Below, piece after piece: positions 3,300-34,561 of a stretch of 64,000 bases of DNA. Origin of the DNA: Dimorphilus gyrociliatus (taxonomy: Eukaryota > Animalia > Annelida); NCBI GenBank assembly GCA_904063045.1, contig CAJFCJ010000036.1:124001-188000 (forward strand), read 5' to 3'. The number at the start of each line of letters is the position of its first letter. Positions within the stretch are counted from its first letter, which is position 1. The position numbers and the translations under genes are program-made. The notes beneath the pieces are model-generated. The model had not been told where the DNA came from and ran no database searches. It saw only the letters and a list, made by a program, of their open reading frames with translations.

Positions 3300-6200
3300 T
3301 TATTGAAATTGATGATAAAAATGTGATCTCTTCTGAAGGATCTTTTTTATAAAATTTCCACATAGAAGTATATCATTTGCTGTTGAATTTTCGTTTCCTT
3401 TCTTTAAATATTTCAATGATAAAAAGTATATTTGGCGATTTTTCAAATTTTTCTGTTTTTTAAACACAAAACAAAAGAGTTAATTGATGAATTGGAGTTT
3501 TTCAATATTATACTGTAACGTAAATGTTAGAGAAATCAATTGAATCGTTGTATGAAAACTCTAATCTATGAAGTAATTTCAACATTTGACAAATACTTCT
3601 ACACAGAACGCAAATATTTCTCATTGAATAGAAACTTTTCAACAGTTTTACATCTTGTAATGACGTCATAACTTTTCTTTTAGATAGAAATCTTTCATTT
3701 CCATCAATTAACTTGACGACTGGAGCAGGAAAAGGAAATGTCAATAAAAGGTTATATAATTTTAGGGTTGTGAAGGATGGATGGTTTAAAATAAGATTAG
3801 CGTACATTGTAAGAAGGTCAATTCAAGGGCATTATCAAGATTTTGTTGGCTAGGATAAGAAGGAAGGTATTGTTGAAATGAGATTTTAAAAAATTTAAAT
3901 CAATATGTCGTCATACATTTGCATTGAACGTTTGATCTTCACAGAACTATAATAGGCCTTAATATCTCTTAATGTGTACAATAGAGGATTGATAATTGAA
4001 TTTAGAGGTAAGATAACGATAACCAATGTAACATAGATATCTTTTTTGATATAGAATTCAAAGAAAACTGAATAAACTCCTAGAAAAAGATTGATTGAAA
4101 TGATTGAAAAAGATGAATAATTTAAAAACCTAAAATTGAAATTGGAAACCAACACAAGAGATTTGTAACAACAATTAAAAAGGCATTTAATATTAATTTT
4201 GTTTGTTGACGCTTAAAAACTTGTCTATCTATTAGACTTTTTGCTTTTAAACTTTCTTTCCATATACTTATATATAGAAATACAATTATTATACAAATTA
4301 TTGATATAAATAGGCCGAAAACTATAAATGAAAATATCCATCCAATTGTCTTTTCACTAGTTATTTGTAAAGTAAAACAAAGTGGACTTTTTGAATAGTA
4401 GCCATAATGAAATATGTATAAAGGTAGTAAAGATATACAACCGGAAGTAATAAATGTACAAATAGCGGCTATTGTTGAAGTGATTGGTGTGAATATTCTC
4501 TTAAAAGGATATGCTATAACTAGATATCTTTCAATTGATATTAATAAGAGACTGAAAGTCGAAAATAGAATGGAACAACTGCAAAACCAACCAACAAATT
4601 GACACATTTTACTCGTTCTCCATTCGTAATCATTCTCAATATAGCTCCCTCTATAGTAGATATCAAAACTGCCTATAGTTAGCATATATATGGACATGCA
4701 TAGATCGGAGAATGATAGGCCTAGATGGAAAGGATTCTTCTGCTTCTTTGTTACCATTCCCCTAAATAGTAGAGAAATACAATTTTCCATCAATGCTATT
4801 ATTGAAAAAATCCACAGAATTGAACGTATCATTTCCGATCCTAAAAGATCTGAACAAGAATTGAATAACGATTCGGTTGGTTGACAATTTTGAATATTCT
4901 TTGAAAATTTCCAAGCAAAACAACAAAATGAAAAATATTGACTATAAAGTGATTTCAACGACTTTAGCTGTCTAATTAGACGGCTTGCAAACTTTAAAGA
5001 TATAGAACTATGTTCAAGTGACAAATACTCTAATCCGCTTAAAGATTTAAAGACATTTATATGAAAATCTTGAATATTTGAATTTGCTATTATTAAAGTA
5101 CTAAGTGAATTTAAATCCTTAAATAAATAATTTGATAAATAATCAATGTTTGTATATGAAAATTCAATAATTTTTAATAACGTAAAATATTTCATTGTAA
5201 ACTTTTTTGGAAATTTTAATACTGTCTTTCTGATAAATAGTTTCTGTAACATTTTTAACGGATGTGGTAAGATTAATGTCCAATTTATTGGTTTTTGACA
5301 ATTGTCAATTTCCAGTTGAATTAGATTTGGAAATGATTTCGATACGGAAATCATATTGACAAAACCGGATATGTTCTTGAATGATAATGATAAAGTATTC
5401 AATGATTGATTTTTGCTCAATTCTTCTCTTTCTTTTATCCGCTCTTTAAAATTTGAAATTATTATTTCTTTATAATTCGAGAATAGAATATCTTTGAAAA
5501 GGATATATTCGTCTTTTGAATATCTTAATCTCATTATATCCGAAAATGAACATTGAATAATAAGAAATCGTTTACAATTGCAATTATCTGGACAAATTTC
5601 AATAGAATCGCAATACATTTCATCATTTCCTTCTTTACAATCAATAATTTCATTGCAGACGTCGCTTATTGGGATATAAGTCATTTGATCTTTGCATTTA
5701 AAATAGCCTTTAGGCCTAAAATTTCCTAATTGGTTAATAATAATTTTAGTTAATCAATTTTGTCCTCTGCGCCTAGAAGAAACCGGAAATAAGTAATAAG
5801 ATAAGTAAATTTTACCGCAATCGTTCTCATCGTCAAAATGAGTACAATGAACAATTCCATCGCAAACTTGCTTAATTGATATACAGTAATAACTCTGTTT
5901 ACATAAATATTCACCAATTGCGCATGTTGTTTTCGTACAATTTTTTAAAGCGTTGAATGGATAATGAACTTTTGTTAAAAGATTTCCCATTGAATCGTAA
6001 ACAATTTTACATTTAATTTCCAAATCTCTTTCCAACTTCAAACAATCTTTTAAATTAAATTTATCGTAATAGTCTGAACACATTTCACTTTCATCTTCTC
6101 CGTTCAAGCAATTCGTTTGTAGATCGCAAACTTTATCACGTGATATACAACTATCCTCGCATTGAAATTGGTTAAAACTCTCGCAATCTATAGACGTATA

Positions 6201-9200
6201 TGGATAAGAAAGACTAGTTTAGTTTAGGTTCCTATAGTATCTATTATAGTTTACCCATTTCCCCAATTGTTCCATTCCTAAGTAATCTACTATTGATACA
6301 ATTTTCATCGCTACTATCGAAGCAATTGCGTTCATTGTCACAAGCATATTTTTCATTTACGCACTGTCCATTATCACACCTATTAACAAATACATATAAT
6401 AGTTGTCAAGGGTTTAAACTGTCTATTCATTAGGCCTAATAGTTCATTTTAGTTTTAGACCCTTTAATAAACATGTTAGTTCTGTTTTTTACCCTATAAA
6501 ATTGAAAATCAATTACGTACGTAAAAGTATTCATTATACAGACTGGTCTTTCTGAAATTTGTTTGCAATTTTAAAACAATAGCAAAAATCGACAGCAATA
6601 CCGCAAATTTTACCGCAATATCTCTCGTCCAGATCATTTGGGCAGTCGTTTACATAATTACATACAAGTTGAAATGGAATTGTTAAATTTGAATCGCAAT
6701 GAAATTGTTGGATTTGGGAACAATTTCTTTCATCTTCATTTGAAAAACAATCGGTGTATCCATCGCAAACATTAATTGCATTTATACAAAAATCATCGTC
6801 AATGCAGCGAAAAGAATTTTTAGGACATTCGCTAAAATTCACATTTTTCAATTCATTAGATGTTGAAATATTAATTGAATCTTTTACAGAAAGAAATAAA
6901 CTGGTAATGAAGTTGAATAGTTTTTCTATTTTTTCATATTTAAATATTTACATTTAGCTCTACAGAAGTTTTTTGATATAAATCTTCTTTCGCAATCGTA
7001 AGGCGTGTTATAGTAGATTAATCCGCGAACATTCATCATATCGTCAGAGAGTAGATAACATAATTCCGGCGTATTCTTATTGAAAATGTTAGAGAAATAT
7101 CCTTTATTAGTATCCCCAAAACATGCTGAAACGTATCTGTTAAAAATGGAAAAAGTGCCTCATCATTTCAGAATATAAGCCGTTTTGTTCAAAATTTCAA
7201 TTATACTTATTGTTAAATGCTGTAGTAAAACCGTAGTAGTCGTAAGGTATTCCGTCGTCAAACGTAAATTTCTCTTCGTCTTTAATATCTCTAACAATTT
7301 TCAATCCTATTTTGTATTTTTTTAAAAAAAAATCCTCATTGTTCAAGTGTTTTGAACAAATTAATTTAATAATTCAATTACTTCCTCCAACTTGTACATT
7401 TTGATTACCAGGAGCTGAATTATCATCACCTTCGCCTTGTAGTAGAAATTTTGTAAATTTGTACTCGTCATTCGACATATAAAGTAAGGTGGAATTGAAT
7501 TTCTCGCATTCTTCCGCAGCTTCATTGATAGATTTCTTTTCTTTATGTTGAATATATAAATAGCAACCATCATTGAATATAAAAGCATTTGGATCTTGGC
7601 AAGTAATTTCTATTGAAAGGGAAAATTTATTAAACAAAAGAAGAAGATTGAATATGTTATAGGCTAAAAGACTAACTGTAATAATTTTTACATTCAATTA
7701 GAAATTGAGTTGATGAGAAGAGAAATTGTTTTTCTTTACTAGAATTTTTTCAAGAGATTTGAATTATTTTGGAAAAGCGTAACTTGAAAATATTTTAAAT
7801 GTGATTTTTTACTTAAAATATGTAGAATTAAAAAATATAAAATGACAACTAGAAAAGTTATTCTTCTGCGAACATTTGACGCTATTTGTCTTATAAAAAC
7901 TGATTGTTTGCAAAAATTTTCCAAGTTTAATTGTTCCAGTTTTATATCCAAAGTAATTGCAAATATTAATTATTTCAAAAGATTTGAAATAATGTGGTTG
8001 TGTTGAATACCAATAGTTTTTATAAAAGATATAAAACGTTCCAATATAACTGTCATTTGATTTAGATTTTCTATTGTTAAATGTTAAGATATCATTGATA
8101 TTATTATATAAAACTAAATCATTATCTATTTAAAGTAAGTTTTGTTTTGTTGGCGTTAAAGTCTCCTTTTAAAAATATTTTTCTCATTTAACCTTTAAAA
8201 GTTCCGTTATCAACGCAATACGCCGCCATTGCAAGACTTGTTTGAACTCCGTCATTTAATTGACAATCTTTTGATAAATTACCATTCAATTTACATGGAC
8301 CAAGAATAGGTGGTTTCTTATCGTCTAAATGATAATTTATTTCTGGACAAGAGTTTAGTTGAATCATCTATATAAAAATAGAAATAGAGCCATTAAATTG
8401 GTGTGATTTTCCGTATTAAAAGTTACTTATTACTCGATATCCGAAATACATTTTCTTTGGATTTTGTATTGGAAGTGGTATTCTATTGCTCAGTTGACAA
8501 ATCATTAAAGCAACTTCGTATACTTTTGTTGAACTATCAAATAATAATGGAATATGACCAAAAGTCTTTGACTGGATAATATATGATGTTCTATTAGGAT
8601 AATTTTCCTTGAAGAGTATTCTGTTGTAAAATTGCGGCGCCTCTTTTATAAAAAATATATCTACGAAATAAATTATTATTTTACTTTCGTATAGAAAGAA
8701 TAAAATTATTATTAAACCTTGTAATTCACTTTTTAGACAAAAAATCATTGTAAAAAGTGATACATTAGCTAATTTAAGAGAGTTTAATACAGCAATATTT
8801 TTATTATTGTCAATTGATATAAATTGATTTTGCAAATCAATATTTTTGGTTTTATTAAGGTAAAATTGAGTTGTATGGCATAGTTTGAAAGTCGTATCTT
8901 TCTTCTTTACAAGAGTATAACCTTTCCTTTTAAGTCTGAGGAAGAGCCGATAAGTTTGTGTATATATATCAAGAATAGCAAAAATGTCTAGATTTCAATT
9001 CAAAAACACAAATATTTTAGTAATTAAATTAGACAAAGGAAAATATTTCTCCATTTTACAAGCCGAGTTGGTTTTATAGCATTTCAGACAAAATGAAGCT
9101 AAATGTAGCAAAGATTCTTTTGTAACAACTTTCCTAGAAAAGGGAAGGAAGAGAAAGAAATTTTAAAAAAATGATATTAATTTAAATTCTCATAATTTAA

Positions 9201-9632
9201 AGAGTACAAAATATATTTTCCATTAAAATTAACTGGTACAAGCGATAAAATGTCTGTTTATTGAAATAAAGAAACTGTCACTATTGAAATTGATACATCT
9301 GTATCTTAAAGAAACTTTCCATCATTTGGATTGCAAGCTTCGGCTATAAAATGTAAATTGTCGTATCGGAGATAGGAGCAGAGAGTTTGATGATATTCTT
9401 CTTCTATCTTTGTTCCAAAAGCAATATATAAAGTTTCATTTGTATTTTTTACCTTTGCATAGATTTTTCCATAAACTGAAACTCTATCTTCAATTATTGG
9501 TTTTATAAAATAATTTAAGTCTTCGCCTTGTAAATAAGAATAAAAATTTTCGTTATTTTCCATTCCGCATTTACTTTTGCAGTCGATAGTAAGAAATACA
9601 GTAAAAAGAAGAAATAACACCATTATCTCCAT
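3300..9632 (-). CDS. GRL101-like receptor A (multi-exon): signal peptide, SRCR-like, C-type lectin, several LDLa repeats, LRRs, rhodopsin-class 7TM, C-terminal kinase-like tail
   Basis: Signal MEIMVLFLLFTVFLTIDC (ATG 9632); CTLD CQDPNAFIFNDGCYL..AAEECEKFNSTL and GL..FTFDDG..Y; LDLa CPKNSFRCIDDDFCINAINVCDGYTDCFSNEDERNC and others; LRRs in ORF 4122-5684; TM3 SIERY, TM6 TNLLCWFP, TM7 NPLLY; final exons 3806-3849, 3514-3719 and 3300-3452 with GT-AG borders in matching phase. Confidence 0.8.
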
Positions 9633-10159
9633 GTAGTTGTGTATACTCTCAATAAAACTTGTTATGTTCTTTTGTCGTTGACAAACACAATACAATTAAT
9701 AAGAGTTGTATTGCAAAAAAAAACACGGGTAATAATTAATTAACGCCTAATATTTCATTATACTGAAATATATTGATGATGTTACAATCCAGCATTTACC
9801 TTGATATTTTAAATTTTAGGATTCTTTTGTATTTGTATGAAACTTTCATTTGTTATAAAATCCTCTCAGCGCTTTCCATTTCCGGTTCATATATCTCTAG
9901 GTTGGGGTTAGCCATTTGCCCCCTCAGAATTTTTTTGACTAGAGCAGGAGAAAACGTCAATAGATAGTAAACTTTGGACCTAGATTAAGTTTAGGCAAAT
10001 GTCAAATTTATTATTTCCAGACTGTGTTGGGGTTAAACTAAGCTTTGTAAACTGGTAGATTAAGGTTGTGATGTTTCCTTCTCCATCCAGGTAATTGCAC
10101 GTATGTCTATTGTTTCTAGATGAAATCCTATGAACAAAATCATCATTTATAAATCAGAT

Positions 10160-10289
10160 GTCAGGATGGCCGAGTGGTCTAAGGCGCCAGACTCAAGCGT
10201 ACAGCTTACAGTTTAACGGATACGTTTGAACTGTGCAGGGGCGTTCTGGTCCGCGAATGCGGGCGTGGGTTCAAATCCCACTTCTGACA
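10160..10289 (+). tRNA. trnL-CAA: tRNA-Leu(CAA) with a 46-nt intron (10198-10243)
   Basis: GTCAGGATGGCCGAGTGGTCTAAGGCGCCAGACTCAAG-[intron]-TTCTGGTC...GGCGTGGGTTCAAATCCCACTTCTGACA; anticodon stem CCAGA/TCTGG; A and B boxes intact; Pol III T6 terminator at 10294-10299. Confidence 0.95.
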
Positions 10290-10780
10290 ATACTTTTTTC
10301 AAAGTAATTTCATTTCTCAACATCTTCAAAAGCTGTGTTTTTGCTTTCTATAAAAGAAAATTATGAAAATGTTTTCTTTTGAAAAACCAAGTGCCAAAAG
10401 ATTGAGATTCTTGAACAAAATAGAATAGCAACGTAGTCGAAAAATTCATTTATAGATGCTAAATGACAAATCCAGTTAAGTAGGAAAACTGTGTTTTTCA
10501 TTTCAAGAGGTCCTGCCCAAAGTTTAGTCCTAACCCAGTCCAAAGTCTTTCAAATTTCATTTTTCCTAATCAAAAAAATAATTTTAATCTAGAACTGGAT
10601 AATTCCTCTTTTCCTCAACTTTTTGATTATTTATGGTGATAACTTAATAGTTAAAATTCGTGAAAAGTTGCATATTAAAAAAAAATCCCTCTTTAACTCA
10701 GAAATTCTCCTGATCTAGGTGTCCTATTCTTTTTGTGTTAAACAGTAAAATATTTAAAATTACATTCTGAAAAAAAATAT

Positions 10781-10910: not shown

Positions 10911-11081
10911 ATCTGATTTATAAATCAATTGTTCTTTTCATATCGTGTCTTATCGAAAGAATCTCTAGCTATAAAATCTTTACTGAGATAACAACTGTGG
11001 TTGTTAGTCATTGTTATGGTTTTATGGTTATAGAGCGATATCTAGTAAAATACCTGCTTTGGCTTGCAGTTTCTTTAAAAT

Positions 11082-12657
11082 ATGAAAAAGTATGGCTCAG
11101 AAATAGGGCCAAAGGCAAAAGATACTGATGGTGAAGAAAATCCGACTGAAACGTATTCACGAGAAGGAGAAAACAAAAAATTTGCGGTAATTGATCAATC
11201 GTTTGATTTCTCCCATAAATGTAACACAGAGAAAGAGAAAAATGATGTAATAGAAATTTTAAAAGAACACAATAATATAAAAACTATAGTATTGTCTCAA
11301 AACGGTAACTTGGAAATGTCATAGCGGATTTGTGCGACCAACTTGTCAAATCATCAAATACCCTTAAAGAAATACACTTAGAGAGTTGTAATCTAACTGA
11401 GAATGAATGTATACATCTTGGGAAAATGTTGGACAAATGTTCAAAACTGGAAGTAATAAATTTACATTGGAATAAAAGAATTAGAAATGGATTAGAAAAT
11501 ATATGCGATGGACTTGTTCAATCATCGCACACTTTAAAGTATATCAATTTTGGTAAATGTAATCTATCGTTGAATGATTGTAAACATATAGTAAATTTGT
11601 TGAATAAGTGCTATAAAATAGAACTTATTGATTTAAGCTGGAATCAAGAAATGAGAACTGGATTATCAGATATTTTTGACCATCTACTGCAATCGTCAGG
11701 GACTTTAAAACATATTAATCTATGTGGATGTAACCTGACTGAGAATCAATGTACTAGTATTGGAAATATTCTGAAAAATTACCAAATAGAAGTAATACAT
11801 TTAAGTTGGAATCAGGAAATGGGAAATGGATTATCAAAGATTTGCGATGGACTTTTCCAGTCGTCAAACACTTTGAAAGATATCTTCTTTGAGAGATGCA
11901 ATCTGACTGAGAGTCAATGTAAAAGTATTGCTAATATGCTTGAAAACTGTTCTAATTTAGAGACGTTAAATCTCAATTCAAATCAGTGTATGAAAAGTGG
12001 ATTATTAAAGATTCTGAATGGACTTTATAAATCTAGAAATTCTTTAAAATACATTAATTTTCAAAGCTGTAATCTAAATGAAAAAGACTGCAAAAATCTT
12101 GCAAAAATGATAAAGAATTGCTCTAATCTAGAAGTTGTATGTTTAAATAACAACAGTGAAGTGGAAAATGGATTATCCAAAGTTTGTGATGCACTTTCAC
12201 AATCATCAAATACATTAAAGCATTTGAAATTCGGAGGATGCAATCTGATTGTAGATATATCGGAAATTTATTGGAAAAGTGTTCAAACTTAGAAGCAATG
12301 GACTTATTCCTTAATATAAAGTTAGGAAGTGGACTATCTAAAATATGCGATGGACTTGTTCAATCGTCAAATACTTTAAAATATTTAAATTTTGGCTTTT
12401 GTAACCTGACTGAAAACAATTGTAAACATATTGGAAAAATGTTGGAAAATTGTTCAAAAATAGAAACTATAGTTCTAAGTAGCAATCGAGAAATGGGAAA
12501 TGGATTATCATATATTTGTGATGGATTGATTTCTTCATTAAACAATTTAAAAGAGATCCAAATACAAGATTGTGACCTTAATGCAAAACAACGTAAAGAT
12601 GTTCACGAGATGCTGAAACATTGTACCAAATTGAATGGAAAGCAAATGTCTCTTTAA
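11082..12657 (+). pseudogene. Intronless ribonuclease-inhibitor-type LRR-only gene with two frameshifts
   Basis: 57-aa (28+29) repeat SSNTLKxIxLxxCNLTExQCxxIGxxLxxCSKxExIxLSxNxEMGNGLSxICDGLVQ spread over three ORFs in different frames; frameshifts at ~11312 (GG where GGG is needed) and ~12245 (apparent 10-nt deletion). Confidence 0.8.
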
Positions 12658-12765
12658 TTGAGTAGGTTTTAATGAATTTTACTATGGAAATTTCTGTTAA
12701 TTATTAAATAAATAGTGTATTTTTTAAATAATTGATAAATAGTATACTTTGTATATAAGCATTGG

Positions 12766-15700
12766 TTACTTAATCAGATTTCTCTTACCGCTTTCTTTTA
12801 GTATCAATGCTGCAAATTTACCAAAAGCAAATATATCAACCTTGGCTTCAGTATTCTTTATATTTTCGTACTTTAAGTGATATAGAAAGTAAGTGCTGTT
12901 CTTTCCTATCTCTGTTACGTAAACATGATTTTTTAAATCTGCAACATTAGTATACAAGTTTTCTTTGTGCAGCATGCATAGACTTTCAGATATTTTTAAT
13001 ATACAACGAAAGTATTCCAACTGTTTAAAAAATTGAATATTTAGGTCAAGTTTTTTTGCAATAGTCATAGTAAAGATTTTCCTTTCGTAATTCATAATAG
13101 ATGTCACTAGGAATGAATGTTTGAATAAGAGTTTTTAGTGGATTTGAAGAGTGATATAAATAAAAATTATAGCTACTTTGTAACATTCTTCCTTCTATCA
13201 TTCTTTCTATGAAATTGTTTCTATTTGTTTGTTTAATTTTTCAAAAATTGATAATAGAAAGTTGAATGAATTCTAAAGAGAGAAAGTAGACATCATACGT
13301 ACTTCAGCAAGCGTTTCCTTGCCTTTGAAAAGTCCAGAATATTTTTTAATTCGTCAATTGTGTAAATATAAGGATTGGCTACTGGATTTATTGGAATAAT
13401 AATACCAACTACAATACTATAAAGAGTGTTATTTGCTTTAAAATTAGAGAAAACTGATACAAAAGCTGTTAAAGATAAGAAAATATGTAGAAAAGTATAA
13501 AAAATGAAAGAAGAAGGAGAAGAAAATAGACCTAAAATTGAAAATGGTGTCCAACAAATAACATTTGAAATTGAAAGAATGTAGATACTCCATGAAATAG
13601 ATCTTTTTGAAAGAGTATTCTTATCAATTCTCGTATTGGCCGACTGTTTAATAGTATAGAATACTCTAATGTATAGATATAGAATAAAAACACTGATTAG
13701 CAATAGAAATATTCCATAGATAATAAATGAATAAATCCATCCATCTGTTTTAGCATTTCCCATATAAATATTCAAGCAGATTGATGATTTAGAATAGAAA
13801 TTCTTTGAAAAATGTTTCAAGAGGAATATGGATTAATATGAAAAAGATGGAATGTAAAGTTTACCGGAAATAGTAATATTGGTAAACAGGCAATCGTTAG
13901 AGCCAAGAAAAAGAATACTGGACAAATAAATAGTCTATACTTTTTTGTAAAACTCTCTTTAAGCGGATTTAAAATCATTTCGTATCGTTCGCTTGAAATC
14001 GCCAATATATTTAAAGTCGAATAGACAAGTGAGAATGACATAACTACGCCCAAAGTTTTACAAATCATTCCGTGTCTCCATTTCTCTTCAATCTCTAAAT
14101 ATCTTTCATTTTCAAATAGAGCATCAACAATACATATTGAAAACAGGTAGATATTTGATAGTAAATCACTGGACAATAGGCCTAACCTATATAATCTGGA
14201 AGATTTTTTCTTTTTTGAAAATATAATAAGAAGAGCCAAAATATTTCCAATTAATCCAAAAATTGAAAATAGCCAAGCAAGTATTCTAACAAAGCGATTC
14301 GGAATGATATTATTGCATGTTATAAAAAATGAACGTTGCGGTCTACAAATCACATTCTTATCATAATAATATCTTGAAATAATACAGCAAATTTGAAAAT
14401 TTTCAGTAGAAATAATTCTTAAATTGATTAAATTCTTAAAAATATTTGATATAGATTTTAATGGAAAATTTGTCTTGTTTAGATATATGAATTTTAATTT
14501 AATTAATTTATTAAAAATATTATCTTCAACTGATTTTATTCTACTGTTTGAAATTATTAATAATTGTAAATTTTTGAAATTTTTCAATTCAATTTCTCTA
14601 AGAATTTCAATATTGCAGTAGGAAATATCTAAATTTAAAAGATTTACAGCATTAAATTTCTTTAAGCTGTTTAAAGTTGTAAATAGATTATTTGATAAAT
14701 TCAAATTTTGAAGTACTGATAAATTTTGTATTTTAGAAAAATTAAGGAATTTCAGTTGATTTTCTGTTAGAGAAAATGTTAATAAATTTGGTGGAATTTT
14801 ATTAAAATTTATCTCTTCAAGATAGAAATTTTTCTTTATTTTCAAAATGAAATTATTTCTTGAATTTGAAATTTCATTGAATGTAAAATTTCCTTCAAGT
14901 TCAATTTTTTTTATGTAATTTTTAAATTTTCCATTAAGATGAATGGCGGAAGCATTTTTATTTCTACATATCATTTCATATTGAATTATAAAAGTGCAGT
15001 TGTTAAACTCCTCTTCCATTGTAGAATCTTTTAAATTGCATAACATTTCATCAGAGTTCTCTTTGCAGTGAGAAACTCCATCGCATACTTTATGACTTGA
15101 GATATAATAGTCTTCTTTACGGCATTTAAAGAAACCTTTTCGGATGTAATCGCCTATGTAGATTTATTATATTTAGCAATCTTTCAAAATTGGTTAATGG
15201 ATATATTTCATTCCAGTTTTTGACAGATTAAAATGTTACATTTTTACATTTTTATAGCTAAGCTGGAACGAAATATTGCAGTGTAAGAGATGATTCAATC
15301 GTATACCGCAATTAATTTCGTCATCGCCGTGTAGACAATGACTTATTCCATCACAAATCTGCTCAACGTATATACAAGTACCCTCCAATTGACATTTATA
15401 CTGAGCTTTTAAGCATTTTCTACGCGGACTGGCACATTCCATATGATCCCTGAAAATTCAAGGAGAGTGAACGATAGCCCCAAACGATCAATTGAATATA
15501 TCTATACCGGATGTATGGAACATCCGGCCTATAGAGAAGATTTCCATAAGCATCAAAAACTAAGTAGCAAGTGCCCATTGAAACAAATTTACATATTTGA
15601 CTATACGATCGAGGTTTGCATTTCTCTTCATCGTTTGGCTGACGACAGTTTAAAATGCTATTACATTTGAATAGTAAAGATTTACATAGGCCGTCACAAG

Positions 15701-22300: not shown

Positions 22301-25300
22301 ACGAAACGTCCTCAATTTTACCCCAAACCTAACGTAACTCCCTCAGGGACGTTTTGTTCTAGTATCTCTTTAATTTCTTTGCAAATTACACTTAAAGCTA
22401 ATATGTTGCTATGAAATACAGATTCAGATTATCCTTCTCTTATCAGTTTGAGCACAAGCACTACAGCTCCATTTCAAAATAATACATATTTTTGTCAAAA
22501 AAGTGAAACTTACATAAATATTATATACGTTTGTGACAGGTATCCGGACTGTCCCCTTTCCGAAGACGAAGGTGGCCATTGCCAATATAGTGGGAAGGAA
22601 AAATTCCACTGTTTGCTTGAAAATTTCAGTGTATCTTATAAATTGCTGTGTAATTTTGTCAATGATTGTCCTGATGAATCTGATGAGAAATTTTGTGGTA
22701 AATCAAATTATATTCTCATTACAAAAACAATAAAAACGTTTTTATTCCCATAGAAAGAGCATCCTGTGAAACAAAGGAAAGGCATGTATATTTCTTTTCA
22801 TATTCATTATTACGCTAAAGACTAATTAAGCATCTTCGGAAATTATCTGATACTTTTGTATATAATAGTGCATGCAATAACAAACAATGCATTCAAACAA
22901 ACTACGTTTGCAATAACAACAAGAATTGCTTTGATTCAAGTGATGAAATATGCAATAACGTAAACGCTATTCATACTAAATTTAAAAAACGTAAAAATCA
23001 AAAACACTATTCAAATATTGATATTTTAAAATATTGATTTTAAAAATAAGACTGCCGACTTTCAACACAAGTTCCATGTCAGAAATCATGTATAACAAAG
23101 CAAAAAAAATGTAATCTCAGACCTGATTGTCCAAAGGGAGAAGATGAAGACACCTACCAATGTGAAAATTTCCTTTATCCTAATAGAAAACAATTATTTA
23201 ATAACTACAAATGCCAGCTTCAGTTTGACTCATTGGGAATCCTTTTAACAAATCCACAATTTCCCCATTATGATCTAATCAAATGCAATAAAACTACATG
23301 CCAACCAGGACAGTTCTTATGTACATTTTATAAATTTTGCATATCAATTGAACAAGTTTGCGATGGAATTAATCATTGCATTCATAATGAAGATGAAATG
23401 ATTTGTGGTAAGATCATAGATGACAACACAAAATATCTTTCTCATACCTTTCCCAGCATTAACAATATCTTTAAATTTATCGATTTCTATTACGACAAAT
23501 GTTTCATGGGGAGCATAAATTTTCATTAAACATGAATTTTTCTAGATGAAATCTACACAAAAGGATTCTTTAAATGCAGAAATGAAACAAAAGCAATTTT
23601 ACCCAGCAAAGTCTGTGATGGAATAGTAAACTGTTTCTATGGAAGTGATGAACTCTCCTGCAACCAAATCAACGTATCTAACTATTCTTTTTGCCGAACT
23701 ACTTTAGCAACAGAAATGTTCTGTCAAATGCAAATAAAAAACAAAAGAATTTCAGACAACCAAACTTTTCACATAGCAAATGTTCCACATATTAAAAAAC
23801 TTCAAATTTATGGATTGATGAATTTAAAAGTGAGTGAAAAACAGTTTCAGATTACTTCTTTGTCCATAGAAGACAATTTTCAAAGGAATATCTTTGTTCA
23901 TTTACAATTCTTTCCCAATCTGCTGGCTTTGACTTTAAAATCAAACAAACTAACATTTAGAAACGATTTCAGTAGAACATTACTTCTACTTCAATATCTC
24001 GATCTTTCCAGTAACAGATTTACAAACTTTTCTATCTTGGAGAAATTTCAAAGTCACGATTTGAGATATTTGGATTTTTCAAACAATCCACTTCAAAATT
24101 TCAATCATAACATGAAACATTTTCGGAAATTAAACATTTTGAAAATAACAAATTGTTATATTTCAAATATTCAACCAGTTTTCTTTAAATATTTCACCAA
24201 ACTGGAAAGGTTATACTTGAATGGAACTGAATTTCCTTCAAAGCAAAGTATGACGATTGTTCGACAGCTGCATCGAATAAAGATGATCTTTAACGAATTC
24301 TACAAACTGTGCTGTTTAACCTGGAAATTGTTTGGCAATCACATCATTTGTAAACCGTCTACATCATTGTACAACACTTGTTCTAGTCTCCTCAGTAGTT
24401 TGCCTATTCGTCTCTTGTATTGGATCAATGGACTTTTTGGGTTAATTGGAAATGTGTTTTCAATATTTCTGCTGTTCAAGTCGAAGAGTCAATCGACTGC
24501 ATTTAGATTATCATTAATTTTAAGTGATAGTCTTACATCACTGTATGTTGTTACAATAGCCATTGCAGACGCCTACTTTAAAGATAAATATTTGGAAAAT
24601 GATGAAAGATGGCGAAATAGTGTGCTTTGTCAAATTATTGGAACAAGCATGTCATTTTCCCTACTCTTGTCCACCCTGAGTTTGTTTCTTTTGACATTTG
24701 AGCGGTTCCAAGCAATAGTTGTGCCTTTTTCTTCATTGAAAATTCAACATTATAAAAGAGTGATCATTCCAATTTCATTTCTATTGTCGAGTATTTTGGC
24801 AACACTTCCATTTGGTTTTTATAAAGTATAAGTAAAAAACAGACATTCCTTTGACTGTAAAATGAAAATGAATGTTTCAGAATTTTCACAGAAAATCTCC
24901 AATTTGCTTTAATTTGCATATAACAAGTGAGAAAAGCGCAGGTTGGCTGTATTCATTTTTCGTTTTCGGTATTTTACTGTTTGTGTTGAGCGCCACAATT
25001 AGCGTTCTTTATATGATGATTGTGAAAACTGTCAAAAAGTCTTTTGTAAGGTTTAATAAGAGTAAAAGGGATAAGGATAAATTGGATAAGGTCATGAAGA
25101 CTGTATTTTTGATAATAATGACAAACTTGATATGTTGGTTTCCAATTTCACTTCTCGGTTTGTAGAATATTCATCATTGAAAATGCTAAAGCGTCACATT
25201 TTGAACAGGAATTTTGTCAGTCTTTGTCGAAATCCACATCAGTAGGAATATCTATTCAGTTATTGTTGCTGTGTTTCTGCCAATAAATGCTCTTCTCAAT

Positions 25301-26251
25301 CCTCTGATCTATTCTTACAGTGACATAAAACTTTTAATGCAAGTTAAGGCAGAAAAAAAAGAGGAAGAACAGTTAAGTGATAATTCATTCTATTTTAGTG
25401 TAACTATTGTATTTAACCAAGTTTTCCATGTGTCAACAGAAGAAATATAATTAGCAATGCAGCATATCAGATTCGACAGCAAAGTAAGATTAACTGGTGT
25501 TTTTTATTTGTAATTTGTTTGAGAATAAATGGTTTTTAGTGATACATTTTGTTGAAAATTCAAAAAAGAATAGAATTTATTTGAAAGAATTGAGTGGAAA
25601 TTGTGAAAAATTGACATTACATAAAAAGTTTTTCGAAAATTTGCTATATTTAAAGATCATCAAGGACGTAATTGAAGCTTTAAAGTTTTGTCATGATCAT
25701 AAAATGAAGTATATAGATGGATTTACCATACATGACATTTACTATGATGTAAGGAAAATAACAATTTTTTCTACATTCTTTTATTATAAAGGCAACTTTT
25801 CTTACTGTTCTTGAGAATTTCATCTTGATTATAGTAATTGTTGTATTGTGATATATTTTAATTTAAATGGTTTGTAAAAATTTTTGAGTTTGTAAATATG
25901 TTGTAGGTGGTATTTCTGTGGTTTTGAACTGTGTAAAAGAGAGGTAGTTGTGGGTTTAGAGAAAAATCTCTAATTGATTGATTTCTTCAGTCGGGTAGAA
26001 CTAAATTTTAGGTTGTGTCAGAAGGTTTTAAAAAGAAAATATTTGATTTTCTTCAATCATTGTCTTCTTTTCGTAATTTGCTTTTATCAAACCTTTTCTT
26101 TCAGATTGATAAAAATGTCTTTTTCCTAACTTGGAGAAAATTGTCGATTATGGAAGAAGGTAGAGAAAATAAAGATATATTTTCATTTGGACTGCTAACA
26201 AGAACCATTCTGCAAAAGAAACAATTGTATAAAAATGTGTTAGAGTCTTGA
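19340..26251 (+). CDS. GRL101-like receptor C (multi-exon): signal peptide, 2 SRCR-like, CTLD-like, LDLa repeats, LRRs, 7TM, kinase-like tail
   Basis: Signal MMNKTYLFFLSLNFLCLCIT; SRCR-like NLLCEKMGY and GRFQIVNEKKW..TICKSFDF; LDLa FCQKSETYINIIYVCDRYPDCPLSEDE; LRR/TM exon 23716-24831 with TFERF; TM6 TNLICWFP, TM7 NPLIY; tail exons 25440-25483, 25540-25748, 26105-26251. Confidence 0.85.
23303..25420 (+). repeat. ~2.1-kb near-identical direct duplicate (copy 1), offset 8600 bp from copy 2
   Basis: Colinear with 31903-34020 including introns; only scattered substitutions seen by eye (roughly 20). Confidence 0.95.
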
Positions 26252-27880: not shown

Positions 27881-28219
27881 TTGCATCGTCCGGATATTTT
27901 TGTCCATTACTTTATACTATTGCTTCAATTTCCACAAGCAGCATAAGATAATATAGAAAGTGTATATAGGCTTAAATTAAGAATTTAAACTCATTTTTTG
28001 ACATATCAATTAAAAGCAGCTAAAAATAGTAGAAACACAATGCTTTCGACATTTAAATCTCATTGTTTTTTTAAATACAACAATGAAATAAAAATTAAAT
28101 CTTGGGCATGATTTTACCCTTTTTTTATCATTTCGCCTAACATTTACATTATTTACACTAATTAATCTAAAAATTTGTATAAACATTTTAACAATTTCAA
28201 ACACAGTCCATTTTTAGAG

Positions 28220-31200: not shown

Positions 31201-34200
31201 GGCATTGAACAAGTATTTAATTGTAAATTCTACAACTATACCATCCATTTCAATTTGCTATGCAACTATATAAAAGATTGTCCAGATGGTTCTGATGAGG
31301 AGTTTTGCGGTAAAAACAATAACAATCTTTTATACTCATCTCCTTCATTTATTCTACAAATTATTTGCCTGTAGAAAGATCGATCTGCAAAGAAACAGAA
31401 AGGTGAAAATGTTTACTTCACTCTATCTAAATCATAATATCTGCAAATACATTCATTTGAAGAACTTGCCAAAACAAACAATGTATTCCGAAAGAGCAAG
31501 TTTGTAACAACAAGAAAAATTGCTTTGATTCAACTGATGAATATTGTTTGAATGAAAATGCCATTGAGGACTATTTTAAACTTAGTAATAGCATATAACA
31601 GACTACAAAATTCAAATTCATTTCTATGTAAATTTTTCCCTCTTTTTTACTAGGATGTAGGCCTGGGATGCAAAAATCCTGCCTTACTGGCTGCATAAGA
31701 TATGAAAAAATGTGTAACTTTAGACAGGATTGTTCAAAAAGGGAAGATGAACAATATGAAATATGTTTTTTTGAATACAATATCTACCATTCACAATTAA
31801 AACACAATGAATGCGAGTTAAAATATGACTCATTGGGAATCCTGCTAACAGATCCACATTTTCCTTTTAAGGAGCTCTCTAACTGCAATAACTCTACTTG
31901 TGAACCAGGACAGTTCTTATGTACATTTTATAAATTTTGCATATCAATTGAACAAGTTTGCGATGGAATTAATCATTGCATTCATAATGAAGATGAAATG
32001 ATTTGTGGTAAGATCATAGATGACAACACAAAATATCTTTCTCATATCTTTCCCAGTATTAACAATATCTTTAAATTTATCGATTTCTATTACGACAAAT
32101 GTTTCATGGGGAGAATAAATTTTCATTAAACATGAATTTTTCTAGATGAAATCTACACAAAAGGATTCTTTAAATGCAGAAATGAAACAAAAGCAATTTT
32201 ACCCAGCAAAGTCTGTGATGGAATAGTAAACTGTTTCTATGGAAGTGATGAACTCTCCTGCAACCAAATCAACGTATCTAACTATTCTTTTTGCCAAACT
32301 ACTTTAGCAACAGAAATGTTTTGTCAAATGCAAATAAAAAACAAAAGAATTTCAGACAACCAAACTTTTCACATAGCAAATGTTCCACATATTAAAAAAC
32401 TTCAAATTTATGGATTGATGAATTTAAAAGTGAGTGAAAAACAGTTTCAGATTACTTCTTTGTCCATAGAAGACAATTTTCAAAGGAATATCTTTGTTCA
32501 TTTACAATTCTTTCCCAATTTGCTGGCTTTGACTTTAAAATCAAACAAACTAACATTTAGAAACGATTTCAGTAGAACATTACTTCTACTTCAATATCTC
32601 GATCTTTCCAGTAACAGATTTACAAACTTTTCCATCTTGGAGAAATTTCAAAGTCACGATTTGAGATATTTGGATTTTTCAAACAATCCACTTCAAAATT
32701 TCAATCATAACATGAAACATTTTCGGAAATTAAACATTTTGAAAATAACAAATTGTTATATTTCAAATATTCAACCAGTTTTCTTTAAATATTTCACCAA
32801 ACTGGAAAGATTATACTTGAATGGAACTGAATTTCCTTCAAAGCAAAGTATGACGATTGTTCGACAGCTGCATCGAATAAAGATGATCTTTAACGAATTC
32901 TACAAACTGTGCTGTTTAACCTGGAAATTGTTTGGCAATCACATCATTTGTAAACCGTCTACATCATTGTACAACACTTGTTCCAGTCTCCTCAGTAGTT
33001 TGCCTATTCGTCTCTTGTATTGGATCAATGGACTTTTTGGGTTAATTGGAAATGTGTTTTCAATATTTCTGCTGTTCAAGTCGAAGAGTCAATCGACTGC
33101 ATTTAGATTATCATTAATTTTAAGTGATAGCCTTACATCACTGTATGTTGTTACAATAGCCATTGCAGATGCCTACTTTAAAGATAAATATTTGGAAAAT
33201 GATGAAAGATGGCGAAATAGTGTGCTTTGTCAAATTATTGGAACAAGCATGTCATTTTCCCTACTCTTGTCTACCCTGAGTTTGTTTCTTTTGACATTTG
33301 AGCGGTTCCAAGCAATAGTTGTGCCTTTTTCTTCATTGAAAATTCAACATTATAAAAGAGTGACCATTCCAATTTCATTTCTATTGTCGAGTATTTTGGC
33401 AACACTTCCATTTGGTTTTTATAAAGTATAAGTAAAAAACAGACGTTCCTTTGACTGTAAAATGAAAATGAATGTTTCAGAATTTTCACAGAAAATCTCC
33501 AATTTGCTTTAATTTGCATATAACAAGTGAGAAAAGTGCAGGTTGGCTGTATTCATTTTTCGTTTTCGGTATTTTGCTGTTTGTGTTGAGCGCCACAATT
33601 AGCGTTCTTTATATGATAATTGTGAAAACTGTCAAAAAGTCTTTTGTAAGGTTTAATAAGAGTAAAAGGGATAAGGATAAATTGGATAAGGTCATGAAGA
33701 CTGTGTTTTTGATAATAATGACAAACTTGATATGTTGGTTTCCAATTTCACTTCTCGGTTTGTAGAATATTCATCATTGAAAATGCTAAAGCGTCACATT
33801 TTGAACAGGAATTTTGTCAGTCTTTGTCGAAATCCACATCAGTAGGAATATCTATTCAGTTATTGTTGCTGTGTTTCTGCCAATAAATGCTCTTCTCAAT
33901 CCTCTGATCTATTCTTACAGTGACATAAAACTTTTAATGCAAGTTAAGGCAGAAAAAAAAGAGGAAGAACAGTTAAGTGATAATTCATTCTATTTTAGTG
34001 TAACTATTGTATTTAACCAATTTTTTCCTATGTTATCAGAAGAAATATAATTAGCAATGCAGCATATCAGACTCGACTGCAAAGTAACGTTTTTGAAATA
34101 TCTTGTATTACTGATAAGTTCAATTAGTTATTGATGTGTTATTGAAAATTTTGCAGTGTTAAATTTTATCGAAGAATCAAGAGCCAATAAAATTTATCAA

Positions 34201-34561
34201 GACGAATTGACTGATTATTTTGAACCATTTCTCTTTAACATTGATTATTTTGAGAGAATGTACGATATGAAAGTTATTGCGGACATAATCTGTGGAATTC
34301 AATATTGTCATGAACATCAATTGTCATTTGGGAAAGAACTGACGTTGAATGACATATTTCATGATGTAAGAGTATTTATAAAGTCAAGTTTATAATATGA
34401 CTAATGCAAACGGCTTGTTTTTTTAGAGAAATAATGACGTAGTTTGTATAAAACCAAAAAATTTTGTCATATTAACCGTAGAAGTAGAAAAGAGGGATAT
34501 CTATTCATTTGGTAATATATTAAAGAAAATTTTACAAATGAAGCATATCCACAAATGTTGA
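28220..34561 (+). CDS. GRL101-like receptor D (multi-exon), tandem paralog of C, with kinase-like tail
   Basis: First exon close to that of C (VYVEGILKGKML..NNLLCERMGY); LDLa, LRR and 7TM exons nearly identical to C; tail exons 34040-34083, 34157-34365, 34427-34561 (stop TGA 34559-34561). The start codon is tentative. Confidence 0.85.
30542..30564. repeat. Short (CCCTAA)n-like tract
   Basis: TAACCCTAACTCTAACCCTAACC, about 3.5 imperfect units inside gene D. Confidence 0.4.
31903..34020 (+). repeat. ~2.1-kb near-identical direct duplicate (copy 2)
   Basis: See 23303-25420. The 371-aa ORFs differ at one residue that I can see (RVIIP vs RVTIP). Confidence 0.95.

What the first reader, a model, noticed from the sequence alone, without database searches (positions are those of the whole stretch)
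3300..34561. Four GRL101-like 7TM receptors each carry a C-terminal degenerate protein-kinase-like module
Seen: after TM7 all four paralogs continue into exons with kinase C-lobe-like motifs. A (3300-3719): VKLID...RSICQMLKLLHRLEFSYNDSIDFSNIYV...NDILLCGNFIKKIL. B (12766-13106): LKISESLCMLHKENLY...KVDIFAFGKFAALIL. C (25540-26251): KIIKDVIEALKFCHDH...DIYY...KDIFSFGLLTRTIL. D (34157-34561): KVIADIICGIQYCHEH...NDIFH...RDIYSFGNILKKIL. Established: these match kinase helix E (..QI..GL.YLH), the position of the catalytic loop and subdomain IX (D-x-[WY]-S-x-G, helix F). Gly-loop, VAIK, HRD and DFG are absent and the activation segment is shortened. LGR/GRL101 receptors normally end in a short tail. 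7TM-kinase fusions are known from Dictyostelium and oomycetes (GPCR-PIPK), and kinase-homology domains from single-pass receptor guanylyl cyclases; I know of no animal 7TM-pseudokinase family. Inference: a lineage-specific receptor class in which a pseudokinase fragment acts as scaffold or allosteric module.
Basis: partly seen in the sequence, partly recalled or inferred. Interest (0 to 1): 0.9.

Follow-up and report, generated by a model that had tools for sequence, protein, structure and literature searches.

The report
Hormone-type receptors ending in kinase remnant
Four neighbouring hormone-type receptor genes each carry, just after their last membrane helix, a short dead remnant of a protein-kinase domain; the same remnant also ends related receptors of molluscs, spiders, mites, ribbon worms, acorn worms and sea lilies, and I found no description of it.

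Summary
All four LDLa-LRR-7TM (GRL101-like) genes have homologous open frames 160-210 bases after the TM7 exon, at the coordinates given. Taken alone these tails are too diverged to call kinase-like: the only Pfam hit is Pkinase at E 0.03-0.05, for C.

The link to kinases comes through relatives. GRL101-like receptors of molluscs, chelicerates, a nemertean, hemichordates and a crinoid end in the same 100-130 residue domain. A profile of that domain hits solved kinases (GCN2 1.8e-10, TYK2 3e-10). Three relatives' tails hit Pfam kinase models, two of them above the curated cut-off. AlphaFold models of the B tail and of a Glandiceps tail match almost only kinases.

The module runs from about strand beta5 and the hinge to helix F. 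It lacks the N-lobe, the catalytic motifs and helices G-I, so it cannot be an enzyme.

A, C and D have canonical phase-1 splice sites that join TM7 to the tail in frame. B has the acceptor but no compatible donor, and an RNA contig reads through its stop.

Function is untested. The scan noted this receptor type before on other DNA of this genome.

The parts
5757..6851 (-). Gene A, LDLa-repeat exons (frames 6537-6851 and 5757-6107)
   Evidence: Pfam Ldl_recept_a, E 5.6e-13 and 3.8e-6
4122..5684 (-). Gene A, LRR region and TM1-TM5
   Evidence: Pfam 7tm_1 E 1.8e-19 and LRR_8 E 2.6e-7
3930..4155 (-). Gene A, TM6-TM7 exon (NPLLY). The proposed phase-1 donor starts the intron at 3929 (alternative 3947). 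The read-through stop is at 3895-3897.
   Evidence: Translation; splice enumeration
3520..3719 (-). Gene A, tail exon 1: hinge/alphaD-like stretch, alphaE (..LKLLH) and catalytic-loop position (YND..SN). Strong acceptor TTTCCTTTTCCTGCTCCAG|.
   Evidence: 20.7 bits, E 2e-5, to the relatives-only tail profile in the blind ORF scan. The spliced A tail scores 35.2 bits against a shuffle maximum of 10.5.
3300..3452 (-). Gene A, tail exon 2: short activation-segment remnant, alphaF (NDILLCGNFIKKIL) and stop
13865..15046 (-). Gene B, LRR region and TM1-TM4 exon. It ends at the RNA-confirmed 62-base intron 13864-13803.
   Evidence: Run X1 contig joins 13865 to 13802, GT..AG on the minus strand
13289..13802 (-). 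Gene B, TM5-TM7 exons (13802-13532 and 13465 down to at least 13289). They are separated by the RNA-confirmed 66-base intron 13531-13466. The stop codon is TGA at 13295-13293.
   Evidence: X1 contigs. Contig 13289-13455 reads through the stop and past both GT donors.
12766..13106 (-). Gene B, single tail exon (113 codons, kinase-like, the most degenerate). It is transcribed, but has no phase-compatible canonical donor, so it is probably not translated as a fusion.
   Evidence: X1 contig 12690-13106 ends exactly at the AG acceptor. Splice enumeration. AlphaFold pLDDT 79 and kinase matches. Only 5.2 bits to the relatives-only profile.
23716..25376 (+). Gene C, LRR region and TM1-TM7 exons (frames 23716-24831, 24872-25165, 25214-25376). 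The phase-1 donor starts the intron at 25377.
   Evidence: Pfam 7tm_1 and LRR; splice enumeration
25540..25748 (+). Gene C, tail exon 1: beta5/hinge-like VIHFVEN, alphaE (KIIKDVIEALKFCH) and catalytic-loop position (YID..HD)
   Evidence: Pfam Pkinase E 0.033-0.051, profile positions 66-123. The spliced C tail scores 14.7 bits to the relatives-only profile against a shuffle maximum of 8.2.
26105..26251 (+). Gene C, tail exon 2: alphaF (KDIFSFGLLTRTIL) and stop. The intron is 25749-26104, GTAAGG..TTTCAG, phase 0.
32316..33976 (+). Gene D, LRR region and TM1-TM7 exons. The core frame (371/371 residues) and the TM7 exon are identical to C. The phase-1 donor starts the intron at 33977.
34157..34365 (+). 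Gene D, tail exon 1: alphaE (KVIADIICGIQYCH) and catalytic-loop position
   Evidence: The spliced D tail scores 19.8 bits to the relatives-only profile against a shuffle maximum of 5.7. Splice sites.
34427..34561 (+). Gene D, tail exon 2: alphaF (RDIYSFGNILKKIL) and stop. The intron is 34366-34426, GTAAGA..TTTTAG, phase 0, at the same place as in C.

Best explanation
What it is (shown). A, B, C and D are LDLa-LRR-7TM receptors of the GRL101 / type C LGR kind. Their 110-120 residue tails are fast-evolving copies of a C-terminal domain shared by a large clade of GRL101-like receptors in protostomes and ambulacrarian deuterostomes.

That domain is a truncated protein-kinase fold. It starts at about strand beta5 and the hinge. 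It continues through helices D and E, the strands that normally carry the catalytic loop and DFG, and a shortened activation segment. It ends 10-20 residues after helix F.

The N-lobe (Gly loop, VAIK lysine, helix C), a usable HRD/DFG and helices G-I are missing, so it cannot bind ATP canonically or catalyse. What stays conserved is the structural hub of the C-lobe, the helix E histidine and the helix F aspartate.

In A, C and D the tail is joined to TM7 by a phase-1 intron of 163-210 bases. It is split by a phase-0 intron after the catalytic-loop strands. In B the internal intron is lost and the TM7 donor is out of phase, so B's tail is probably a recently uncoupled 3' exon.

How it works (inferred). 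The module is a non-catalytic docking or regulatory domain held under the receptor's cytoplasmic face. A lone C-lobe core exposes surfaces that the N-lobe and helices H/I normally cover. It therefore probably needs a partner: the receptor's own loops, a second receptor, or a cytosolic protein. This would modulate coupling, trafficking or a G-protein-independent output.

My confidence is about 0.85 in the identity of the domain and about 0.4 in this mode of action.
For: Receptor identity: Pfam Ldl_recept_a, LRR_8 and 7tm_1 hits.

Tails homologous to each other.

Tails homologous to other species' tails:
- A relatives-only HMM scores A 35.2, D 19.8 and C 14.7 bits, against shuffle maxima of 5.7-10.5.
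- A blind scan of all window frames ranks the tail exons first.

Relatives:
- A 7TM-based search found GRL101-like proteins with tails of 150-215 residues after NPxxY.
- They are named.
- The domain always sits at the extreme C-terminus, including in 20 or more proteins that were not used to build the profile.
- Single open frames from Logan, ENA and JGI contigs hold TM6-7 and the tail together (P0019, P0080, P0086, P0143).

Kinase homology:
- The family profile against the PDB gives 2056 sequences at E<=1. Every one of the 60 listed carries a protein-kinase or pseudokinase domain, including GCN2 1.8e-10, TYK2 3.2e-10, JAK, VRK3, BRAF, RNase L and PKR.
- The matches run collinearly from the hinge to the catalytic loop, and in some as far as helix F.
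- Pfam PK_Tyr_Ser-Thr scores 29.2 bits on P0082 and 24.3 bits on P0151 (cut-off 23.1). Pkinase is E 5.6e-6 on P0151.

Fold:
- AlphaFold of the B tail gives pLDDT 79 and pTM 0.73. AlphaFold of the P0082 tail gives a core at pLDDT 90-97.
- Nearly all of the top 50 Foldseek hits for the B tail, and all 50 for P0082, are kinases.
- VIA-align Z reaches 12.1. RNase L residues 436-534 align at rmsd 2.5.
- Language-model neighbours that carry a Pfam family are almost all Pkinase clusters.

Coding constraint: dN/dS of about 0.35-0.65 between tails, though dS is saturated.

Splice sites.

RNA: run X1 splices two B introns and covers the B tail exon up to its acceptor.
Against: - The window's tails alone do not reach significance against kinases. 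Pfam gives E 0.03-0.05 for C only. PDB profiles of the four tails give kinases at E 1.4-3, among unrelated hits. The kinase call for the window therefore rests on transitive homology.
- B scores only 5.2 bits to the relatives-only profile.
- No transcript shows the TM7-to-tail junction for any of the four genes.
- In B the stop after TM7 is present in RNA and no in-frame canonical donor exists.
- Foldseek E-values are modest (0.003-0.5), because the domain is short.
- A kinase fragment without helices G-I is not known to fold on its own, and the AlphaFold models are predictions.
- Function is entirely inferred.
Confidence: 0.75

Rival explanations
1. Decaying relic. The domain was functional in an ancestor, but in this genome the tails drift with little or no function. 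B shows the end state, an untranslated 3' exon.
For: - The window tails are the weakest family members: 5-35 bits, against 40-144 bits for other species.
- Paralogue tails are 14-31% identical, against 31-34% for the LRR/7TM core.
- B lacks an in-frame donor and its stop is transcribed.
Against: - All four frames are still open in DNA where about 8% of random codons would be stops.
- The helix E His and the helix F Asp..Gly are invariant in all four.
- dN/dS is below 1.
- A matches the family profile well, at 35 bits.
- The domain has been kept at the C-terminus in six or more phyla.
Confidence: 0.25
2. Not a fusion. The tail exons of A, C and D are untranslated 3' exons or a separate small gene, and the receptors end at the stops just after TM7.
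For: - No RNA junction was seen for any gene.
- In B, RNA reads through the stop and the only canonical splices break the frame.
- The proposed donors of A, C and D are weak matches to the consensus.
Against: - In relatives TM7 and the tail lie in one protein, and in several cases in one uninterrupted frame.
- A, C and D each have GT..AG pairs in the same phase (1) as the acceptor of all four genes.
- The two RNA-confirmed introns of B also have weak donors, GTAAAC and GTCTAT.
- A frame conserved under dN/dS below 1 is not expected of an untranslated region.
Confidence: 0.12
3. Chance resemblance. The tail is a conserved receptor tail of another fold, and the kinase motifs are coincidental.
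For: The window sequences alone give no significant kinase hit.
Against: - The family profile hits 2056 PDB sequences at E<=1; the 60 shown are all kinases or pseudokinases, down to E 1.8e-10.
- Pfam kinase models score above the curated cut-off on two relatives.
- Two independent AlphaFold models match almost only kinases, and the order of secondary-structure elements is the same.
Confidence: 0.03
4. Cryptic enzyme. The tail still binds nucleotide or phosphorylates, perhaps together with a partner that supplies an N-lobe.
For: - A and C have an Asp at the aligned HRD position (my reading of the alignments).
- One hemichordate member (P0151) keeps N-lobe-like sequence, Pfam Pkinase positions 43-135.
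Against: - There is no Gly loop, no VAIK lysine, no helix C, no catalytic-loop Lys/Asn context and no DFG Asp in the window tails.
- Only about 20-26 residues lie between NPxxY and the domain, which leaves no room for an N-lobe.
Confidence: 0.02

Closest known systems
GRL101 (Lymnaea stagnalis) and GRL101-like / type C leucine-rich-repeat GPCRs (arthropod 'LGR5' of Veenstra, PMC8286064)
   Same: The ectodomain has LDLa repeats and LRRs on a rhodopsin-type 7TM. The closest database relatives are annotated GRL101 or GRL101-like, and they carry the same C-terminal domain.
   Different: The papers I could search describe the ectodomain and the 7TM region, and treat GRL101 as an orphan receptor. 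I found none that mentions a kinase-like tail. The precomputed Pfam lists of these proteins hold no kinase family. The Biomphalaria GRL101 proteins, a Lytechinus hit and a Macrobrachium hit did not show the domain.
GPCR-TK and GPCR-TKL/K fusions of choanoflagellates, sponges, oomycetes and amoebozoans (eLife 2025, PMC12716839)
   Same: A 7TM receptor is followed by a C-terminal domain of the protein-kinase superfamily.
   Different: Those carry complete kinase domains that Pfam recognises, on unrelated 7TM types. That paper reports GPCR-TKs in sponges but in no other metazoan lineage. Here the 7TM is a bilaterian class A LGR, and the domain is a truncated, catalytically dead C-lobe core.
Kinase-homology (pseudokinase) domains of receptor guanylyl cyclases and JAK JH2 / RNase L pseudokinases
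   Same: These are non-catalytic kinase-fold modules inside receptors or signalling proteins that act by allostery or docking. JAK/TYK2 JH2 and RNase L are among the best sequence and structure matches.
   Different: Those are complete bilobal folds, and many still bind nucleotide. They sit in single-pass or soluble proteins. The tail here has no N-lobe and no helices G-I.
GPCR-PIPK (Dictyostelium RpkA, Phytophthora GK4)
   Same: A 7TM receptor fused to a C-terminal kinase-type domain.
   Different: That domain is a lipid-kinase (PIPK) fold, unrelated to the protein-kinase fold, and it occurs in protists only (cited in PMC12716839).

Membership tests
GRL101-like / type C LGR | LDL-receptor class A repeats in the ectodomain | tested here: met
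   Pfam Ldl_recept_a in upstream exons of A, B, C and D, E 1e-13 to 7e-5
GRL101-like / type C LGR | Leucine-rich repeats followed by a rhodopsin-type 7TM domain | tested here: met
   Pfam LRR_8 and 7tm_1. The closest relatives are annotated GRL101-like.
Protein-kinase superfamily (fold homology) | Significant profile similarity to kinases, collinear over the conserved subdomains | tested here: met
   Met at family level: profile A4 against the PDB gives E 1.8e-10, and the 60 hits shown are all kinases or pseudokinases. Pfam scores are above the cut-off on P0082 and P0151. For the window tails it is met only through homology to that family: A 35, D 20, C 15 and B 5 bits. The direct Pfam hit is E 0.03 for C only.
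Protein-kinase superfamily (fold homology) | Predicted structure superposes on kinase C-lobes | tested here: met
   AlphaFold of the B tail and the P0082 tail. Foldseek TM-score by query is 0.5-0.64 and the probability about 1, on kinases. VIA-align Z reaches 12.1.
Protein-kinase superfamily (fold homology) | Structural hub: helix E histidine (..LH) and helix F aspartate (D-x-x-x-x-G) | tested here: met
   His is invariant in A2. Asp, Ile and Gly are invariant in A3. Both are nearly invariant across the family. Their equivalence to PKA His158 and Asp220 is my reading, from established kinase knowledge.
Active protein kinase | N-lobe with Gly-rich loop, VAIK lysine and helix C glutamate | tested here: not met
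   The domain starts at about beta5 and the hinge. Only 20-26 residues separate NPxxY from it in the window genes. In the P0082 model the 45 residues before the domain are of low confidence.
Active protein kinase | HRD catalytic aspartate with the Lys/Asn of the catalytic loop, and the DFG aspartate | tested here: not met
   The aligned positions read YND/TNV/YID/FGK in A/B/C/D, and no tail has a DFG Asp. The family consensus there is 'lgg'.
Canonical pseudokinase (complete bilobal fold lacking catalytic motifs) | A complete kinase domain, including the N-lobe and helices G-I | tested here: not met
   All family members end 10-40 residues after helix F, and there is no N-lobe. P0151 alone keeps N-lobe-like sequence.
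GPCR-TK / GPCR-TKL/K of choanoflagellates, sponges and protists | A full kinase domain recognised by standard domain models at the C-terminus of a 7TM protein | tested here: not met
   The precomputed Pfam lists of 60 or more GRL101-like relatives hold no kinase family. The tails match only profile positions of about 66-165 out of 258-263.
GPCR-TK / GPCR-TKL/K of choanoflagellates, sponges and protists | Common descent of the 7TM or kinase part with those families | not tested
   I made no tree of the tail with sponge or choanoflagellate GPCR-TK kinase domains, because their sequences were not fetched.

The most novel reading that the evidence does not exclude
The GRL101 clade of LGRs is an ancient bilaterian GPCR-kinase fusion. 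An ancestor carried a complete kinase domain, of which Ptychodera P0151 keeps the most. The retained C-lobe core is an obligate docking site that couples ligand binding at an orphan, possibly insulin/IGF-type, receptor to a partner kinase or another G-protein-independent pathway. This would be a second signalling mode for a class A GPCR, overlooked because domain models miss the remnant.
Probability: 0.2. Interest if true: 0.85.

Novelty: new variant of a known kind. Interest (0 to 1): 0.66.

Why it matters
GPCR-kinase fusions have been reported from protists, choanoflagellates and sponges. The 2025 survey (PMC12716839) found GPCR-TKs in sponges but in no other metazoan lineage.

Here a bilaterian class A hormone-type receptor family ends in a conserved kinase-fold remnant in at least five phyla. 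GRL101-like LGRs are orphans and have been proposed as a second IGF receptor. Standard annotation does not flag the remnant.

The finding gives a concrete, testable handle on how these orphan receptors signal. It also gives an example of a kinase fold pared down to its helix E / helix F core.

For this window in particular, the tails are the degenerate end of that series, and one copy (B) is apparently being lost.

Tried and rejected
1. Direct Pfam scans of the tail exons gave only C exon 1 against Pkinase, at E 0.03-0.05. That is not enough alone.

2. PDB searches with profiles of the four window tails, split into an N part and a C part, gave no significant kinase. CaMK and titin kinase came up at E 1.4-3, and there was an unrelated WDR36 hit at 5e-4.

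3. One alignment of exon pieces with the whole B tail was misaligned by MAFFT. I therefore split the alignments and used concatenated sequences only in local scripts.

4. A word-indexed homologue search with A's LRR/7TM frame returned only distant vertebrate relaxin and FSH receptors. With the C/D TM7 exon it returned nothing. This genome's own proteins are not in that collection, so no spliced product could be recovered.

5. RNA was limited to one small run (X1), kept as contigs. It confirmed two B introns and transcription of the B tail exon, but held no contig across the TM7-tail junction. Reads were laid on B, so A, C and D were not examined.

6. I looked for a fifth tail or receptor at 57.8-62 kb. 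It is an NLR-like LRR gene, and the weak HMM hit there is noise.

7. In the Haliotis locus the domain is also split in the same loop, but in another phase. The introns after TM7 lie elsewhere, so there is no clean conservation of gene structure.

8. Literature searches for GRL101 together with kinase-like, pseudokinase or tail terms found no description of this domain.

Full report
**What is in the window.** The DNA is AT-rich (27-35% G+C) and carries four receptor genes. A and B lie on the minus strand, C and D on the plus strand.

Each gene has exons with LDL-receptor class A repeats (Pfam E 1e-13 to 7e-5). Each also has a long exon with leucine-rich repeats and the first transmembrane helices (7tm_1 E 1.8e-19 for A), followed by one or two small exons reaching TM7 with its NPxxY motif. 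This is the GRL101 / type C LGR architecture.

They form two exons in A, C and D, and one exon in B.

**Are the tails real and related to each other?** Yes.
- Frames of 70-113 codons without a stop are very unlikely in DNA of this composition. I estimate about 5e-5 for 113 codons.
- The four spliced tails align end to end.
- Five of the six pairwise Smith-Waterman scores exceed every one of 300 shuffles (z 4-27). B against D does not (z 1.9).
- A profile built from any three tails scores the fourth at 32-84 bits.
- The tails are very diverged: 14-31% identical, against 31-34% for the LRR/7TM core of A, B and C.
- C and D have identical cores but tails only 31% identical.
- dN/dS between tails is 0.35-0.65, with dS saturated. 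That fits coding sequence under moderate constraint.

**Are they kinase-like by themselves?** Not significantly.
- Pfam gives a single hit, Pkinase on C exon 1, at E 0.033-0.051. It covers profile positions 66-123, the hinge to just before HRD.
- Profiles of the four window tails against PDB sequences put CaM kinases and titin kinase at E 1.4-3, aligned on helix E. Unrelated proteins score as well.
- Language-model features of the B tail point to kinase fragments. That is only a lead.

**The decisive evidence comes from relatives.** I searched 1.8 billion representative proteins with B's TM5-TM7 exon. The best hit is only 33% identical, so close relatives of this animal are not in the library. 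Still, many hits are GRL101-like receptors whose sequence continues 150-215 residues beyond NPxxY.

Those tails share one pattern with each other and with the window tails:
- '..PP.GY..L..YL......L.......I';
- a helix ending in 'LH';
- a stretch '..hG.h..d.hfV';
- a variable loop, with 'DFN' or 'DFY' in chelicerates;
- 'D-[IM]-x-x-[FY]-G-x-L-[VI]-x-x-[ML]-L' near the C-terminus.

The source records name these species:
- mites: Leptotrombidium, Dinothrombium;
- spiders: Stegodyphus;
- molluscs: Haliotis, Patella, Mizuhopecten, Pecten, Argopecten, Ylistrum, Crassostrea, Ostrea, Saccostrea, Mercenaria, Ruditapes;
- a nemertean: Lineus;
- hemichordates: Ptychodera, Glandiceps;
- a crinoid: Antedon.

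A profile of 30 such tails finds the domain, always at the extreme C-terminus, in 20 or more further proteins that were not used to build it. Several hits are single uninterrupted frames that hold TM6-7 and the tail together (P0019, P0080, P0086, P0143). In those species the fusion is therefore physical.

Biomphalaria GRL101 proteins, a Lytechinus hit and a Macrobrachium hit did not show the domain. It marks a large subset of GRL101-like receptors, not all of them.

**Do the window tails belong to that family?** The profile built only from other species scores the spliced tails as follows:

| Tail | Bits | Best of 500 shuffles |
|---|---|---|
| A | 35.2 | 10.5 |
| D | 19.8 | 5.7 |
| C | 14.7 | 8.2 |
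| B | 5.2 | 5.6 |

I also scanned all 1308 stop-to-stop frames of the window with that profile. The top five are A exon 1 (E 2e-5), D exon 2, A exon 2, C exon 1 and D exon 1. A, C and D are thus members in their own right. B is tied to them through its similarity to C and A.

**Is the family domain a kinase fold?** Yes.
- A profile of 30 relatives' tails plus the B tail matches 2056 distinct PDB sequences at E<=1. All 60 shown are protein kinases or pseudokinases:

  | Protein | E-value |
  |---|---|
  | GCN2 | 1.8e-10 |
  | TYK2 | 3.2e-10 |
  | a JAK | 8.5e-9 |
  | VRK3 | 8.7e-9 |

  STK33, MNK1, BRAF, RNase L, PKR, PERK, SYK and titin kinase follow.
- The matches run collinearly from the hinge through helix E and the catalytic-loop region. 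In several cases they run on to helix F.
- Pfam on single relatives' tails gives PK_Tyr_Ser-Thr at 29.2 bits for Glandiceps P0082 and 24.3 bits for Ptychodera P0151, above the curated cut-off of 23.1. It also gives Pkinase at E 5.6e-6 for P0151 and PK_Tyr_Ser-Thr at E 1e-4 for P0041.
- AlphaFold2 of the B tail with this alignment gives pLDDT 79 and pTM 0.73. The element order is strand, short helix, long helix, two hairpin strands, long helix.
- The P0082 tail gives the same order, with pLDDT 90-97 in the core and a low-confidence linker of about 45 residues after TM7.
- Foldseek against the PDB returns kinases almost exclusively among the top 50 for the B tail, and only kinases for P0082. TM-score by query is 0.5-0.64 and the probability about 1, but E-values are modest at 0.003-0.5 because the query is short.
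- VIA-align gives Z up to 12.1 (CRAF). It gives Z 10.6-11.5 for the RNase L pseudokinase, and one RNase L entry (Z 10.8) aligns residues 436-534 contiguously at rmsd 2.5.

**What is kept and what is lost.** The module begins at about strand beta5 and the hinge. It runs through helices D and E, the strands that normally carry the catalytic loop and DFG, and a shortened activation segment. It ends 10-20 residues after helix F.

There is no Gly loop, VAIK lysine or helix C. There is no HRD: the aligned positions read YND, TNV, YID and FGK in A, B, C and D. There is no DFG aspartate and no APE. Helices G-I are absent.

The invariant residues are the histidine ending helix E and the Asp..Gly of helix F. 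From established kinase structure these form the hydrogen-bond hub of the C-lobe. What is conserved is therefore the scaffold, not the chemistry.

One hemichordate member, P0151, keeps more N-terminal kinase sequence (Pfam Pkinase positions 43-135). It matches JAK and MEK1 on its own. This hints at a more complete ancestral domain.

**Gene structure and RNA.** I listed every canonical GT..AG pair that keeps the frames open.
- The acceptors before the tails are all in phase 1: A 3719, B 13106, C 25540, D 34157. A's is a strong polypyrimidine acceptor.
- A, C and D have phase-1 donors after helix 8: 3929 or 3947, 25377 or 25398, and 33977 or 33998.
- The internal tail intron is in phase 0, just after the catalytic-loop strands: C 25749-26104, D 34366-34426, and A starting at 3519 or 3513 and ending at 3453. 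It is absent in B.

Public data gave one small run that behaves as RNA (X1). Its contigs remove two B introns with GT..AG on the gene's strand, 13864-13803 and 13531-13466. The second intron is open in frame, so the naive ORF overstates the protein by 22 residues.

One X1 contig covers 12690-13106 and stops exactly at the tail's AG acceptor. Its depth is 6.3, against 3.2-3.9 for the 7TM exons. The B tail exon therefore appears to be transcribed as a terminal exon. Contigs carry no strand, so a long 3' end of the convergent LRR gene is not excluded.

No contig bridges TM7 to the tail. A contig covering 13289-13455 reads through the TGA at 13295-13293 and past both GT dinucleotides of that region. 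The one at 13302 is in phase 2 and the one at 13298 in phase 0. Joined to the acceptor, these give a frameshift with 20 unrelated residues, or an immediate stop.

B's kinase-like frame is thus probably no longer translated as part of the receptor, although it is still open. I had one read-laying run and used it on B, so the A, C and D junctions remain predictions.

**How it most likely works.**
- Shown: the domain is a dead, truncated kinase fold at the C-terminus of an LGR, conserved across phyla.
- Inferred: it is a docking or regulatory module. A C-lobe core without its N-lobe and helices H/I exposes normally buried surfaces. It is therefore likely to pack against the receptor's cytoplasmic face, against a second receptor, or against a cytosolic partner.
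- Rival reading: in this genome the tails may be drifting relics. B and the low profile scores fit this. The open frames, the invariant hub residues and dN/dS below 1 argue against it for A, C and D.

**Comparison with what is known.** 7TM-kinase fusions are described for oomycetes, amoebozoans, choanoflagellates and sponges. [quoted passage not shown]

Papers on GRL101 treat it as an orphan LGR, and one proposes it as an IGF receptor. They describe the ectodomain and the 7TM region only (PMC8286064). My searches found no paper that links GRL101 with a kinase-like tail. The precomputed Pfam lists of more than 60 relatives hold no kinase family.

The nearest functional analogies are the kinase-homology domains of receptor guanylyl cyclases and the JAK JH2 and RNase L pseudokinases, but those are complete folds.

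I therefore file this as a new variant of a known kind. It is not a member of the GPCR-TK families, and not a canonical pseudokinase. Earlier notes of this scan describe the same receptor type on other pieces of this genome. One follow-up there reached a similar reading, also without RNA. I did not rely on it.

Noticed in passing
window 13466-13531 (-): A 66-base intron of gene B, removed in RNA contigs of run X1, is open in frame inside ORF 13293-13820. A plain ORF reading therefore adds 22 residues that are not in the protein.
   Followed up: yes
window 23716-25430 versus 32316-34030 (+): C and D are identical over the 371-residue LRR/TM core frame and over the TM7 exon, but their tails are only 31% identical. 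The homogenised tract ends just after the TM7 exon.
   Followed up: partly
window 11330-12717 (+): A convergent gene of RNI/NLR-type leucine-rich repeats is expressed at about 35x word depth in run X1. Its 3' end overlaps the 3' end of gene B at 12690-12717.
   Followed up: no
window 16221-16500, run X4: The contigs of run X4 differ from the window only by C>T changes, 20 of them in 280 bases. The run looks like a bisulfite-converted library.
   Followed up: no
window 35200-36912 (-) and 57879-62580 (-): Further LRR-solenoid genes lie here, one starting with a RING-like cysteine pattern. They are not receptors and have no kinase-like tail. A weak profile hit at 59492-59731 is noise.
   Followed up: partly
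L001 25909-27093 (Haliotis rufescens, protein P0138): In abalone the tail domain is also encoded by two exons split in the same loop, after '..FLAVSQE'. The split falls inside a codon, not in phase 0 as in the window. The introns after TM7 are placed differently.
   Followed up: partly
protein P0151 (Ptychodera flava GRL101-like), residues 1063-1367: This tail of 305 residues keeps N-lobe-like kinase sequence (Pfam Pkinase positions 43-135). The model ends abruptly at 'ILFDFAKPSTCL'. The gene model may be cut short, or this member may keep a nearly complete pseudokinase.
   Followed up: partly
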